Origin: Kudoa neothunni | Lineage: Eukaryota > Animalia > Cnidaria | Length of the DNA stretch: 64,000 nucleotides | Assembly: GCA_964304625.1 (NCBI GenBank) | Contig: OZ199838.1 | Span: forward strand, 6,304,144 to 6,368,143 | Direction: 5' to 3' | In this document: positions 55,384 through 63,734 of the stretch, piece after piece | Position numbering within the stretch: position 1 is the first letter of the stretch | Layout: every line of letters starts with the position of its first letter | Made by a program: the position numbers and the translations under genes | The notes under the pieces: generated by a model | What the model saw: only the letters and a program-made list of their open reading frames with translations | The model's database searches: none | What the model was told of the DNA's origin: nothing

Positions 55384-57259
55384 CAGTCGAGATTCGATAT
55401 TGCGTAATTTTTGGGGCCAAGGAAAAATTACGCAATAAAAAGGTTTTACGCAATATCGAGTCACGCACACGCGCACTTGTAAAAATATTCGATTTAAACT
55501 TGTTTTGTGCGTTTATCCTACTTTAAATCATTGCTAGTGAAATAAAATAAATATAAGGAATTTTATCTAAATTAACCAGACAAAATTATTATGAAAAAAT
55601 GAAGTAATTTTAGTTTGGTGCCATCTTTGAGATGATATTTTTAAAATTCGATCCATTATCGGATGAAGATCGATGAGTCCAGATGGATCTTCCTGAATAA
55701 ACACCTTCCTTAATGTACTTACGGCATGCTTTATATCTTTTGCTGGAACTTTTGGTTCTTCCTCATCAGATTTGATTTCATTCTTAATTGGATTCACTGT
55801 TGATATTAAGACATCGCCGTTATATTCTTCACAAGTAGGTAAGTTATCATCATCAAAGTTGGTCTCCCATGTTTCCTCCTCGACTATAAAAATATTAAAA
55901 TTTTATTGAATATTTATACTCTGTTCATCTTCGAAAATTTTATTATTTGTTTCCGTCTCTGTATCTCCTATGATAATGGATTAATTTTTGAAGTTCGCAT
56001 TAGCTTTTACTTTCGCTAAATATGCCCGACTTTTTAAAACAGTTGACAATAATTTCAGGTGGAATACTGTTTCATGCTTCTTGGAGTGTCAAAATTGCAT
56101 TAAGTAATGTAAATTTATTATTTAACGAATCATCACATAATGCCATATGGCTACACAATATTTTTTTATATCTACTTTTAAGACAATTAATCACTCCGAG
56201 ATCGAGTGGCTGTAAAACACTTGTAGAATTTTTCGTTGTTCTGACTCCATTTTAAAATTTAATTTTTTCATTATCTAGACAAAAAATAGCAGAGGTCATC
56301 CGAGAATTTTTTTGGGCATAATACTCATAAGGTAAATTTTTCACCCCCTTGAAGCACCTGGGGTTTTGGTATTTCCCAATTACGACTAAGGGCAACTTTT
56401 CTCCGCTTAAAGAGCACGATGCCAAAATCGTTATTCTTTTTTTCGATAGCTTTTTAACTTTAATGTCATTTTCTTCTTTTAATACATAACTACTGTTCTG
56501 TAATTGCTCATAAAACGAACCAGTTTCGTCAATATTGATTATATTTTTTGGGCTATATATGCTTATCAAATTTTTATTTTCATAGATCCACGAATCAATA
56601 AACGCGACGTTAGCGCTCGCAGCTTCACCATGAAAATACTTGAAAATGATTCCAAACCTTTTTTTAAACCCCGCTAGCCAACCCCTGCTTGCTTTAAAAT
56701 TTTGAACTACATTCTTTCTGAAAATTATGGTGGCAATTTCAAGTATTACGTCACCAAAAATAATGTGACCATTGGTGCGTTTTTTGATAAACCATTCATA
56801 AACTTCTTCGCCTATGTTGATAAATCTTCCATTTGAATGCCTCTTCCTATTTCCTGCAACATCTGAATTTTTCAGCTTGGTTTCATGAGAAAGAATTCTG
56901 TCAAGCGTTGAATGTCCTTTAAGAAATAAATTATCGATTAAAAATAATCATACCACTAAGTTTAAACTTTTCAACCGTCATTTTCTTTGCGCCCTTTATT
57001 GATTTTATTGAATTGTAATATTGTATTATTCTAATTTTCTCAGAAATTTCACGCTGCTCCCTGGACATACTGAAGATGAAATCACGCAATACTAAATCAG
57101 AGGCACATAGAACAAATATTTTTTTATTTTTATTCTATATTATTAATTTAATAAATAAAGTAATGATATAACTCTAAAATTAAGTCCCAATGTAAATATC
57201 TTCATATCGAAAATCTTAAATTACGCAATACCGAATCACGCACTATCCAATCTCGACTG
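55384..57259 (-). mobile_element. Tigger/pogo DNA transposon
   Basis: Ends TA|CAGTCGAGATTCGATATTGCGT and ACGCACTATCCAATCTCGACTG|TA. Confidence 0.88.
55567..57068 (-). pseudogene. TIGD4/6-like transposase with two small introns, internally disrupted
   Basis: HTH KFKLSG|HSTLDRIL, CENPB-type FKASRGWLAGFKKRF, HGEAAS, NIDETG, SKKRIT, GEKLPLVVIGKYQNPRCFK, VLQPLDLGVI, C-terminal QTKITSFF. Confidence 0.85.
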
Positions 57260-61422: not shown

Positions 61423-63734
61423 TTATAATGAAGTTTTCAAAAATAGTATTTTCCATACCAGCATTCCCAATCGAATGTATATTTCCATATATCCAATCCC
61501 AGCAATTATTACACATATGAAAATACATTGGTTTAAGGTTAGATGAGTAACAGTTTTCGATCGGATTTGGGTATAATTGCCAAAAAGTACTCTATCGGTG
61601 TGGTGGGTTTCGTTCCTGCAGAAAATGGGTTTGATAAAGTTGCACTTAATATAAAATATAAGAATTCCTTAATCAAGTCAAAACAATAATATTTACTGGA
61701 CAATTACAAAAACTCGCACAATAACATGATTCAATCTGACTAAGATTAAAAAAATGCCAATCGATTATTTCCCCCTTTGAATTTTTCAACATAACTATGC
61801 AAAGGAATTTAGAAATTTTAATTTTAAGAAAGACAACCACGTTACTAGGGCAATTATTTTTTTTTGCTTCGATCTTGGGAAGAATTTCAAGTGTGTAAAC
61901 TTTTATGCTTTTGGGAAAGATTTTATGTGTCTGTTCATTTTTAGAAAATTCGTATAACGATAGGCACTTTCCTAATGAAACCTAAATAAAAATAATATAT
62001 CGGTTTAAAAAAAAGGTTGTGTTACGGTGAAAACTGCTTCAATGAGGCCATAATTTATCACAGTGACTACAATCACACGACCTTTAGAAGTGGTGTTTGT
62101 GGTGGCAGCAATTATTTTGGCTTCCGATCTAAATTATTATTTTAAAGGGTGAAAATGAATAAACACTTTGGATACATATTATATGTAACAGAAGTGAGTG
62201 ATCCCTCCACAATAATAGTAATTAAACTAGATGAAGAATAGCTTTTGGTTATTTTTAATTGAGGGGTTTTGTGATGAACCAACTCGCAACTTCCATATCT
62301 ACTGCATAAGTAGATGGGTTTATATCCTGCAGAGATACGTTTCTTAGTAAAAGTTCAAAAATTGTTTGGCATCATCTCACTCATACTGTATCTTCCTTAA
62401 TAAGATCTTTGGGTTGGTTCAGTAGGCAGCTAATAACGATTAACGTTAATTGGAGTATTAATAGAGTTAAAAATATACGATCCAGCTTTATTATAACAAC
62501 TATAACCATCTAAACCCTGATTTCTAAAAGCAGAATAGCCTGTGCCAATTTTATTGCATTCAGTCCCTAGCATCGATACCAAGTGGTTGGGTACTATCAG
62601 CATCTAGTAGGTTATTAAAATGTAGAATCTTAGAAAAAATAACTTTATTATTATGCCCATTGAGTGGAACAAGAAAAACATGACTACTGAGATTAGGTAT
62701 TTGTTCTTGAAATTCAAATTCTCCTGAATATAGAACTGACAGCTTTAAACATGTTAAATTTTGGAATCTATCACAACAACGATTTACTTTGTTACTCCGG
62801 TAGATATTATTGTGTGAGCCAACATGTACAATAATTGGTTTGCTCATATCATTTTTTGTTTTATCTATGGCTATCTTTATTGATATATTGGTGTATATTT
62901 TGTATGTGAATATCTCATACACATCGTACCTTAATAGAAGATTTGCGGTGTCAAGGAAAACCTACTGTATTCACAAGTTACCATAAATCTACAAATCGTA
63001 AACAATGAGCAGAAGCTGAATTTTTATTCGCGAGCGAACAATCGATATCACCTCTTGTAAAAACCGTCTTATTGAAGAAATATTTGTCAAATTTCTCTTT
63101 TCCAGTGCACGAACAACAAAACCCCTTTCACAACAATAAGCTTTAAAGAATCAATAAAACATTTCATCTACTTGACTGTCCCATATTGGTTGTGACTGTG
63201 CGTCTTTTTGATCTTCTGTAACAACGTTACTGTATGCATATCCACATGTAACATGTGGATCCATCCATTCGTCTCTACACGAAAAAAAGTTCTCATTTTG
63301 ATACCATTCCCCTAATTTGATAATTTCTTCGTATGGATGATGATTAACTTGAATCTATTAAATAATATTTTCTATTAAATTCACTAAGATATACTTTTGA
63401 TTTCATTAATTCGTATCTCAGTTGCGGGAGTTGTTTGACGATATCTAATTTAAGAGGGTAATCCAATGGAACTAGTTGGCCATGTTTGTTGTGAACTTTT
63501 GTGACTTTAAATGCCAATTCTGACTATGATTTAGTTAATATATTTGTTTTTTAATTATTAAGATACTTTTTGTACAAGTTCCTCAATCGATAATGTTAAA
63601 TACACCTGAGATCGACATTCAATGGGTTGGTTACTTTCGGGGCAGGATGACACTATAGAATGAGATAATACTTTTTGAGCACCAGTTCCCCAGATGTGAA
63701 CAAACGTAAAAGTCAATGTTATTAATGAATTCAT
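61423..63734 (-). CDS. hap2: HAP2/GCS1 class II gamete fusion protein (fusexin), 13 exons, 585 aa
   Basis: Exons (minus strand): 63567-63734, 63395-63523, 63172-63354, 62982-63124, 62788-62929, 62644-62742, 62479-62603, 62387-62429, 62176-62342, 62026-62128, 61846-61981, 61697-61794, 61423-61644, totalling 1758 nt with an open frame. All 12 introns are GT-AG, 40-52 nt. Motifs: signal peptide, HPYEE, C.D......TCG, IWDSQ|GFCCSC, TRGDIDC, SAHCLRF..LWY, GTECNKIGTGYSAFRNQ, C....GSCLLNQ, and a C-terminal TM segment. Confidence 0.93.

What the first reader, a model, noticed from the sequence alone, without database searches (positions are those of the whole stretch)
61423..63734. Hidden, intact HAP2/GCS1 gamete fusogen split by 12 mini-introns
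Seen: hand-splicing 13 short exons gives an uninterrupted 585-aa protein with HAP2 signatures (DSQGFCCSC, SAHCLRF..LWY, ECNKIGTGYSAF, GSCLLNQ), a signal peptide and a TM anchor. The ORF track shows only one 120-aa fragment of it. Established: HAP2/GCS1 is the ancestral eukaryotic gamete fusogen, present in plants, protists, cnidarians and arthropods and lost in vertebrates, nematodes and fungi. Inference: this divergent, compact animal genome (possibly a myxozoan-type parasite) retains molecular machinery for gamete fusion, implying possibly cryptic sex. In parasites HAP2 is also a candidate transmission-blocking target.
Basis: partly seen in the sequence, partly recalled or inferred. Interest (0 to 1): 0.9.

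Follow-up and report, generated by a model that had tools for sequence, protein, structure and literature searches.

The report
Intact HAP2 gamete fusogen in Kudoa
The window holds an apparently intact, intron-split gene for HAP2/GCS1, the ancient sperm-egg fusion protein. It lies in the genome of the fish-muscle parasite Kudoa neothunni, whose sexual stage and invertebrate host have never been seen.

Summary
The gene is real. On the minus strand, 63734-61423, eleven exons joined by ten GT-AG introns of 38-52 nt give an open 620-codon frame.

Exon by exon, three consecutive exons hit Pfam HAP2-GCS1 in order. Exon 6 alone passes the curated cut-off (34.2 vs 27.4 bits). Exons 4 and 6 rank only solved HAP2 structures at the top in the PDB. 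Exons 1-10 tile sea-anemone HAP2 residues 1-554 in order. They keep 45 of 58 highly conserved columns, all 16 conserved cysteines, and the Arg/Glu/Gln trio that organises the fusion loops.

Two more divergent HAP2-like loci lie on the same chromosome. Mnd1 and Hop2 domains are also present.

No held paper links HAP2 with Myxozoa. The scan's index holds only this same note.

Not shown: expression, splice junctions, the fold, or fusion activity.

Verdict: a new member of a known family, of moderate interest.

The parts
63567..63734 (-). Exon 1 (56 codons): start ATG at 63734, hydrophobic signal-peptide-like N-terminus (about 63734-63678), first two conserved cysteines. Followed by intron 1, 63566-63524 (43 nt).
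   Evidence: A stop lies just upstream of the ATG in frame. hhalign places it on HAP2 profile columns 16-61. C37 and C55 (Actinia numbering) are kept. The Kyte-Doolittle 12-residue peak is 1.69 at residue 3.
63395..63523 (-). Exon 2 (43 codons), domain I strands. Followed by intron 2, 63394-63355 (40 nt).
   Evidence: Open frame. It aligns to Actinia HAP2 73-118 with the conserved K105 and Y112 kept. On its own the hhalign match is not significant.
63172..63354 (-). Exon 3 (61 codons). It holds the PYE motif, whose Glu matches Chlamydomonas E126, two conserved cysteines, and it ends in DSQ. Followed by intron 3, 63171-63125 (47 nt).
   Evidence: hhalign probability 95.9%, E 5.6e-9, profile columns 125-171. 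tblastn with Actinia HAP2 gives 45 bits and with Hydra 51 bits. Glu alignment.
62982..63124 (-). Exon 4 (47 codons plus 2 nt). It holds the GFCC.C motif, the fusion-loop (cd loop) region with the conserved Arg five residues before a Cys, and SAHCLRF. Followed by intron 4, 62981-62930 (52 nt).
   Evidence: Pfam HAP2-GCS1 21.2 bits, profile positions 115-155. The top four PDB hits are HAP2 structures: 7s0k, 6e18, 6dbs, 5mf1. It is 46% identical to Actinia HAP2 at 58.5 bits. It aligns without gaps to cnidarian loop lengths.
62644..62929 (-). Exon 5 (1 nt plus 95 codons), domain II/I strands. It contains most of the 120-aa mechanical ORF. Followed by intron 5, 62643-62604 (40 nt).
   Evidence: Pfam HAP2-GCS1 15.4 bits, positions 158-239. 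hhalign probability 59.5%, columns 217-296. G281, P290, L292 and P300 are kept. A 45-nt in-frame GT..AG segment (62787-62743) cannot be ruled in or out as an extra intron.
62479..62603 (-). Exon 6 (41 codons plus 2 nt). It holds the PF10699 signature (ij loop) with CNKIG..YSAF..Q. Followed by intron 6, 62478-62430 (49 nt).
   Evidence: Pfam HAP2-GCS1 34.2 bits against a cut-off of 27.4. The six-frame genome search gave 33.5 bits here. All six PDB hits are HAP2 structures. The Gln matching the conserved ij-loop Gln is kept.
62387..62429 (-). Exon 7 (1 nt plus 14 codons): CLLNQPKD..ED motif. Followed by intron 7, 62386-62343 (44 nt).
   Evidence: 73% identity over 15 residues to Actinia HAP2 363-377. 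The invariant C364, L365, Q368 and D376 are kept.
62167..62342 (-). Exon 8 (58 codons plus 2 nt), return to domain I. Followed by intron 8, 62166-62129 (38 nt).
   Evidence: hhalign places it on columns 365-421, in order, probability 28.5%. G383 is kept.
62026..62128 (-). Exon 9 (1 nt plus 34 codons), start of domain III. Followed by intron 9, 62025-61982 (44 nt).
   Evidence: hhalign places it on columns 455-472, in order. I442, the invariant N465 and G467 are kept.
61697..61981 (-). Exon 10 (95 codons): the rest of domain III and the start of the cysteine-rich stem. Followed by intron 10, 61696-61645 (52 nt).
   Evidence: hhalign places it on columns 514-544. tblastn with Actinia 518-551 gives 28 bits. 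C480, C518, C549 and C553 are kept. The C.C...C.C pattern aligns with cnidarian stems.
61423..61644 (-). Exon 11 (73 codons plus the stop at 61425-61423). The stem cysteines continue, then a hydrophobic TM-like segment (about 61527-61453), then a tail of only about 9-14 residues. This is the least certain exon.
   Evidence: The frame is open to the stop. The Kyte-Doolittle 19-residue maxima lie at aa 579-606. There is no significant similarity to HAP2 tails. A rival 29-nt intron (61696-61668) gives a frame that ends without any hydrophobic anchor.

Best explanation
This is the least-diverged of three HAP2/GCS1-family genes of the myxozoan cnidarian Kudoa neothunni.

Shown:
- It is an 11-exon, roughly 620-aa gene with Kudoa-type mini-introns.
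- Its ectodomain is collinear with cnidarian HAP2 through domains I, II and III and the cysteine-rich stem.
- It keeps the family's conserved cysteines and the Arg/Glu/Gln network that holds the fusion loops in place.

Inferred from the family:
- It is a type I membrane protein made in one gamete type during the parasite's unobserved sexual phase, presumably in an annelid host.
- It inserts the loops at the tip of domain II into the partner gamete's membrane.
- It then trimerises and folds back into a hairpin that merges the two membranes, as class II fusogens do.
For: Gene model:
- The frame is open across 10 GT-AG introns of 38-52 nt. None is a multiple of 3, and each brings a stop if retained.
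- Exon GC is 34.0% against 22.9% in introns. The published genome-wide figures are 36.8% and 26.0%, with a 49-nt intron length.

Family membership:
- Pfam PF10699 hits on exons 4, 5 and 6 fall at profile positions 115-155, 158-239 and 254-286. Exon 6 is above the cut-off.
- PDB searches with exons 4 and 6 rank only HAP2 structures at the top.
- Profile-profile hits of all exons fall in ascending order.
- Exons 1-10 tile Actinia HAP2 1-554. They keep 45 of 58 highly conserved columns and 16 of 16 conserved cysteines.
- The residues aligned with Chlamydomonas R185, C190, E126 and the ij-loop Gln are kept. Their role is described in PMC5332557.

Orthology and organism:
- With Actinia HAP2 as the query on the whole genome, this locus is the best hit: 42.5 bits at 46% identity, against 24.6 and 20.4 bits for the other two.
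- The genome identity is supported.
- Mnd1 and Hop2 domains are present in the genome.
Against: - There is no expression or junction evidence.
- The last exon, which carries the TM segment and tail, has no detectable homology.
- The hydrophobic segment holds a Glu and an Arg.
- The cytoplasmic tail is only about 9-14 residues. Plant HAP2 needs a positively charged C-terminal domain (title and abstract of PMC2841615).
- Thirteen of 58 conserved columns differ. These include K58 to Q and several domain III positions.
- The second fusion loop has few hydrophobic residues.
- The fold itself was not modelled.
- With three paralogues, it is not known which one, if any, acts in gamete fusion.
Confidence: 0.8

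Rival explanations
1. It is a genuine HAP2-family protein that has been turned to a non-gametic membrane-fusion or cell-engulfment event in myxozoan development, for example plasmodium or sporoplasm formation. One of the other two paralogues would then be the gamete fusogen, or none would be.
For: Three HAP2-like loci are present in a genome of only about 5,300 genes. The very short tail and weakly hydrophobic second loop differ from well-studied HAP2 proteins.
Against: This copy is the closest to free-living cnidarian HAP2, with identical loop lengths. That makes it the likeliest to keep the ancestral role. No somatic role of HAP2 came up in the papers read here.
Confidence: 0.12
2. It is a recently inactivated or unexpressed gene relic whose frame happens still to be open.
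For: There is no transcript evidence. Kudoa sequences evolve fast. The C-terminal exon has no homology.
Against: 620 codons stay open across ten precisely placed introns. All conserved cysteines and key residues are kept. GC falls from codon position 1 to 2 to 3, as in coding sequence, and the exon/intron GC contrast is clear.
Confidence: 0.06
3. It is host (tuna) or other contaminant DNA, or a viral class II fusogen gene, rather than a parasite HAP2.
For: The assembly was recovered from contaminated fish sequencing data.
Against: The locus lies 6.3 Mb inside a 17.15-Mb Hi-C-scaffolded parasite chromosome. It has parasite-type 38-52-nt introns and about 30% GC. Vertebrates lack HAP2 (established knowledge; review PMC8784728, listed). 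Its best matches are cnidarian HAP2 proteins, not viral glycoproteins.
Confidence: 0.02

Closest known systems
Cnidarian HAP2 (Actinia equina 'hapless 2' A0A6C0WWB8 = P0047; Nematostella vectensis P0052; Hydra vulgaris P0059)
   Same: The domain order is the same. Exons 1-10 tile residues 1-554. Exon 4 is 46% identical, with identical fusion-loop lengths. The CL.NQPKD..EDTKR and PIWDSQGFCC motifs are shared, and so is the cysteine-rich stem pattern.
   Different: It is shorter: about 620 aa against 716-853 aa. The cytoplasmic tail is almost absent. Overall identity is much lower outside exons 3-7. Domain III carries an insertion of about 16 residues. There are three paralogues in the genome.
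Solved HAP2 ectodomains (Chlamydomonas 5mf1/6e18/6dbs; 7s0k; 5ow3; 5ow4)
   Same: The GFCC.C...R....C...AHCL segment and the C.KIG..Y.AF..Q signature align with them. The residues equivalent to R185, C190, E126 and the ij-loop Gln are kept.
   Different: The algal long amphipathic fusion helices are replaced by short cnidarian-type loops. A structure was neither solved nor predicted for this protein.
Other fusexins: viral class II fusion glycoproteins and EFF-1/AFF-1
   Same: The expected overall mechanism is the same: a three-domain beta-rich ectodomain and a trimeric hairpin. This rests on family knowledge (PMC5332557).
   Different: There is no meaningful sequence match. The only hit is a chance-level one of exon 8 to Phlebo_G2_C (E 0.059, 13.5 bits against a cut-off of 25).
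The two other Kudoa neothunni HAP2-like loci (G000:C1:15.608 Mb plus strand; C1:13.921 Mb minus strand)
   Same: They share the family motifs (GxCC.C, AHCL, C.KIG, CL.NQ). The intron lies at the same place before the CL.NQ motif.
   Different: Both are more diverged from free-living cnidarian HAP2 (24.6 and 20.4 bits against 42.5). Copy B has a shortened loop region and few introns in its N-terminal half. Their full gene models were not built.

Membership tests
HAP2/GCS1 (Pfam PF10699) | A match to the PF10699 profile above the curated cut-off of 27.4 bits | tested here: met
Exon 6 alone scores 34.2 bits, and the six-frame genome search gives 33.5 bits at the same place. Exons 4 (21.2 bits) and 5 (15.4 bits) match the preceding profile positions in order.
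HAP2/GCS1 | The conserved cysteine (disulfide) pattern of the ectodomain and stem | tested here: met
   All 16 cysteine columns that are conserved in at least 85% of 24 reference HAP2 proteins hold Cys. The stem pattern continues into exon 11.
HAP2/GCS1 | The Arg (Chlamydomonas R185) to Glu (E126) salt-bridge pair and the conserved ij-loop Gln, which organise the fusion loops | tested here: met
   The aligned residues are R, E and Q in exons 4, 3 and 6. Their functional role is taken from PMC5332557.
HAP2/GCS1 | Domain III (Ig-like) following domain II | tested here: inconclusive
   Exons 9 and 10 give weak hhalign matches in the right order. They keep N465, G467, C480 and C518, but several conserved columns differ.
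HAP2/GCS1 | Type I topology: a signal peptide, a large ectodomain, and a single TM segment near the C-terminus | tested here: inconclusive
   Hydropathy peaks lie at the N-terminus and at aa 579-606. No dedicated predictor was available. The TM-like segment holds E and R, and the tail is about 9-14 aa.
HAP2/GCS1 (class II fusogen, fusexin) | The three-domain class II fold and the post-fusion trimer | not testable with these tools
This needs the joined protein, which has no reference.
HAP2/GCS1 | Gamete-restricted expression and a requirement for gamete fusion | not testable with these tools
The Kudoa sexual stage is unknown (PMC11907682).

The most novel reading that the evidence does not exclude
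Kudoa, which is reported to have lost about two-thirds of ancestral cnidarian genes, has expanded the gamete fusogen into a three-gene family. The copies would be sub-functionalised: either each of the two gamete types carries its own HAP2, or the divergent copies drive the somatic cell fusions and engulfments peculiar to myxozoan development. That would be a co-option of a gamete fusogen within an animal.
Probability: 0.12. Interest if true: 0.7.

Novelty: new member of a known kind. Interest (0 to 1): 0.4.

Why it matters
HAP2 is the one widely conserved gamete fusogen, and its presence is used as a molecular sign of sex. No Kudoa life cycle has been resolved; the definitive host and sexual stage are only assumed (PMC11907682). 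An intact HAP2, together with Mnd1 and Hop2 domains, argues that this muscle parasite of tuna still goes through gamete fusion.

The gene offers a stage-specific marker for finding the sexual phase in candidate annelid hosts. In the paper library held here, no paper links HAP2 or GCS1 with Myxozoa, so the gene seems not to have been discussed for this group.

The three-copy family is unusual for a very reduced genome. The finding is not surprising in kind, because free-living cnidarians have HAP2 and other myxozoans are known to have sex.

Tried and rejected
No other route to reads was tried.
- Close relatives of the 120-aa ORF. The search for homologous proteins found nothing, so no Kudoa orthologue of this copy was obtained and dN/dS could not be computed.
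- Representative search. Run with the 207-aa open frame of paralogue B, it gave only six hits. One of them (P0002, a fish PAN-domain protein) is a false positive.
- Myxozoan HAP2 in the database. No myxozoan-named HAP2 appeared among the hits of Actinia HAP2. The length window means this is not proof of absence.
- 29-nt last intron (61696-61668). Rejected. It is shorter than all the others and leads to a frame without stem cysteines or an anchor. The 52-nt version continues the cnidarian cysteine pattern.
79 pairs totalling 105 nt keep the frame open. The pair 62787-62743 and 61834-61775 was rejected on homology, because it removes the segment with invariant C518. The 45-nt segment alone remains undecided.
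- Global MAFFT of exon fragments (A2). It misplaced several fragments and was not used as a search profile.
- Spo11 TP6A_N. Not detected in six-frame search. This is a 62-position domain in an intron-rich genome, so no conclusion follows.
- Tree of the three paralogues. Not built, because it would have needed merged exon rows and full models of copies B and C.
- Joined protein. The exons were concatenated only inside scripts, to count stops, length, GC and hydropathy. The joined protein was never printed or sent to any search or fold tool.
Full report
**What is in the sequence**

The region 61423-63734 is about 30% G+C, like the rest of the window. The mechanical ORF list shows only short pieces there. 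The longest on the minus strand is 120 aa, at 62560-62922.

Reading the minus strand, I placed ten GT-AG introns:
- 63566-63524 (43 nt)
- 63394-63355 (40 nt)
- 63171-63125 (47 nt)
- 62981-62930 (52 nt)
- 62643-62604 (40 nt)
- 62478-62430 (49 nt)
- 62386-62343 (44 nt)
- 62166-62129 (38 nt)
- 62025-61982 (44 nt)
- 61696-61645 (52 nt)

With these, the frame runs open from the ATG at 63734 to the stop at 61425-61423. That is 1863 nt, or 620 codons, in 11 exons.

Several features mark these as real introns and exons:
- No intron length is a multiple of three, and each brings an early stop if retained.
- Exons are 34.0% G+C and introns 22.9%.
- G+C falls from codon position 1 to 3 (0.385, 0.338, 0.296).

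The 105-nt difference can be removed in 79 ways that keep the frame open. The pair 62787-62743 and 61834-61775 would delete a segment with an invariant cysteine.

**What family it belongs to, tested exon by exon**

The joined-protein search and fold were left out.

Pfam:

| Exon | HAP2-GCS1 score | Profile positions |
|---|---|---|
| 4 | 21.2 bits | 115-155 |
| 5 | 15.4 bits | 158-239 |
| 6 | 34.2 bits (cut-off 27.4) | 254-286 |

- The six-frame search of the whole genome with PF10699 found the same place at 33.5 bits.
- Against all PDB sequences, the top four hits of exon 4 and all six hits of exon 6 are solved HAP2 ectodomains: 7s0k, 6e18, 6dbs, 5mf1, 5ow4, 5ow3.
- I aligned 20 full-length HAP2 proteins (A1) and compared each exon with that profile. 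Every exon's best match falls in ascending order: exon 1 at columns 16-61, exon 2 at 99-111, exon 3 at 125-171 (probability 95.9%), exon 5 at 217-296, exon 8 at 365-421, exon 9 at 455-472, exon 10 at 514-544, and exon 11 at 610-615. Several of these are weak singly. The order is what carries weight.
- I added the exon translations as separate fragments to an alignment of 24 HAP2 proteins. Exons 1-10 tile Actinia equina HAP2 residues 1-554 consecutively.
- In 45 of the 58 columns that are at least 85% conserved, the window gene has the consensus residue. A 46th, the Trp of the LW motif, comes from the split codon at the exon 4/5 junction.
- All 16 conserved cysteine columns hold Cys.

**Functional residues**

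Fédry et al. (PMC5332557) showed the following for Chlamydomonas HAP2:
- R185 and C190 are the only conserved residues in the variable loop segment.
- A positive charge at position 185 is essential for fusion and for membrane insertion.
- R185 pairs with the strictly conserved E126 and with a conserved Gln of the PF10699 signature. This holds the two fusion loops in place.

In my alignment the window gene has Arg, Cys, Glu and Gln at exactly these columns. Exon 4 aligns with anthozoan and hydrozoan HAP2 without gaps, so the loops have cnidarian lengths. The second loop is poor in hydrophobic residues, while the first is rich in Phe and Tyr. What this means for activity is unknown.

**The ends of the protein**

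- N-terminus. It is hydrophobic and aligns with the end of the signal peptide and the first conserved cysteines of other HAP2 proteins.
- Exon 10/11 boundary. Exon 10 ends, and exon 11 begins, with a run of cysteines that follows the cnidarian stem pattern. This supports the 52-nt version of intron 10. The rival 29-nt intron leads to a frame without stem cysteines or a membrane anchor.
- Exon 11. Beyond the cysteine run it has no detectable similarity to HAP2. It holds the strongest hydrophobic stretch of the protein, at aa 579-606. That stretch includes a Glu and an Arg and leaves a tail of only about 9-14 residues. This is the weakest part of the model, and an undetected 3' exon is possible.

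**Whose genome it is**

- Earlier notes of the scan named Kudoa, and I tested that.
- The window's genome has 40,260,978 bases in four contigs.
- The published Kudoa neothunni assembly spans 40.2 Mb with a scaffold N50 of 12.0 Mb. It has three chromosomes plus a circular mitochondrial genome, 30.4% G+C and a 49-bp intron length. One chromosome end carries (TAAACC)n (PMC12239612).
- A search of the genome for that repeat found a single array, at about 12.04 Mb on contig 2.
- The match is close enough to take the organism as K. neothunni, recovered from yellowfin tuna sequencing data.
- The gene lies 6.3 Mb inside the 17.15-Mb chromosome 1 and has parasite-type introns. Host or contaminant origin is therefore unlikely.
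- That paper does not mention HAP2.

**Relatives**

- The best outside matches are cnidarian HAP2 proteins. Actinia equina HAP2 aligns with exons 3, 4, 5, 6, 7 and 10 in order, at 46% identity in exon 4 and 73% in exon 7.
- With Actinia HAP2 as the query on the whole genome, the window locus is the best hit (42.5 bits). Two further loci on the same chromosome follow: about 15.608 Mb on the plus strand (24.6 bits) and about 13.921 Mb on the minus strand (20.4 bits).
- Both further loci carry the family motifs and share the intron before the CL.NQ motif.
- Copy B has a 45%-identical relative on a 19%-G+C contig from a public sequencing run (P0001, L005). The L7Ae-family ribosomal protein gene next to it there lies about 127 kb from copy B in K. 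neothunni.
- I did not build full models or a tree for copies B and C.

**How it most likely works**

Shown: the gene structure, the family membership, and the conservation of structural and loop-organising residues.

Inferred from the family (PMC5332557): it is a type I membrane protein displayed on one gamete type. Its domain II loops enter the partner membrane, it trimerises, and it folds back to merge the bilayers.

The genome also holds matches above cut-off to the meiosis-associated Mnd1 and Hop2/TBPIP domains. The Spo11 N-terminal domain was not detected, which says little.

**What is known and what is new**

- HAP2 in free-living cnidarians is well known (PMC2766252).
- Full-text searches found no paper that meaningfully links HAP2, GCS1 or fusexins with Myxozoa.
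- No myxozoan-named protein appeared among the database relatives of Actinia HAP2.
- The scan's own index holds only this same note.
- The life cycle of Kudoa species is unknown and is assumed to involve an annelid definitive host (PMC11907682).
- So this is a new member of a known family, in a lineage where it bears on an open life-cycle question. The three-copy family is a mild surprise.

**Limits**

- No orthologue of this copy was found, so there is no test of selection.
- There is no structure model. The exons were concatenated only inside scripts, for counts.

Noticed in passing
G000:C1:15608255-15609270 (+), loci L001/L003/L006: A second HAP2-like gene (copy B). It has a 207-aa uninterrupted frame that scores 60 bits on PF10699 positions 58-181, and a second piece at positions 253-349. 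The fusion-loop segment is shortened.
   Followed up: partly
G000:C1:13920988-13921727 (-), loci L002/L007: A third HAP2-like gene (copy C), 46 bits on PF10699 positions 155-306 with intron-like stops. Its exon 4 equivalent is 41% identical to that of the window gene.
   Followed up: partly
L005 (Logan contig of run SRR31175926), 707-1156: A 149-aa HAP2 frame, 45% identical to copy B, on a 19%-G+C contig beside an L7Ae-family ribosomal protein gene. The K. neothunni counterpart of that neighbouring gene is 74% identical and lies about 127 kb from copy B. The contig is probably from another myxozoan.
   Followed up: partly
G000:C1:16980977-16981069 (-) and G000:C1:8785873-8785956 (-): Matches above the cut-off to the meiosis-associated Mnd1 (36.1 bits) and Hop2/TBPIP (36.3 bits) domains. 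The Spo11 TP6A_N domain was not detected.
   Followed up: no
G000:C2:12039536-12040069: The only (TAAACC)n array in the genome, at the end of the 12.04-Mb contig. It matches the telomere-like repeat reported for Kudoa neothunni.
   Followed up: yes
window 56252-56569 (-): A 105-aa open frame whose sequence looks like part of a DDE transposase (my impression, not searched). It is the only ORF of 90 aa or more between 50000 and 61500.
   Followed up: no
window 62169-62342 (-), exon 8: A chance-level Pfam hit to Phlebo_G2_C, a viral class II fusion glycoprotein domain (E 0.059, 13.5 bits against a cut-off of 25). It is curious given the shared fold class, but it is not evidence.
   Followed up: no
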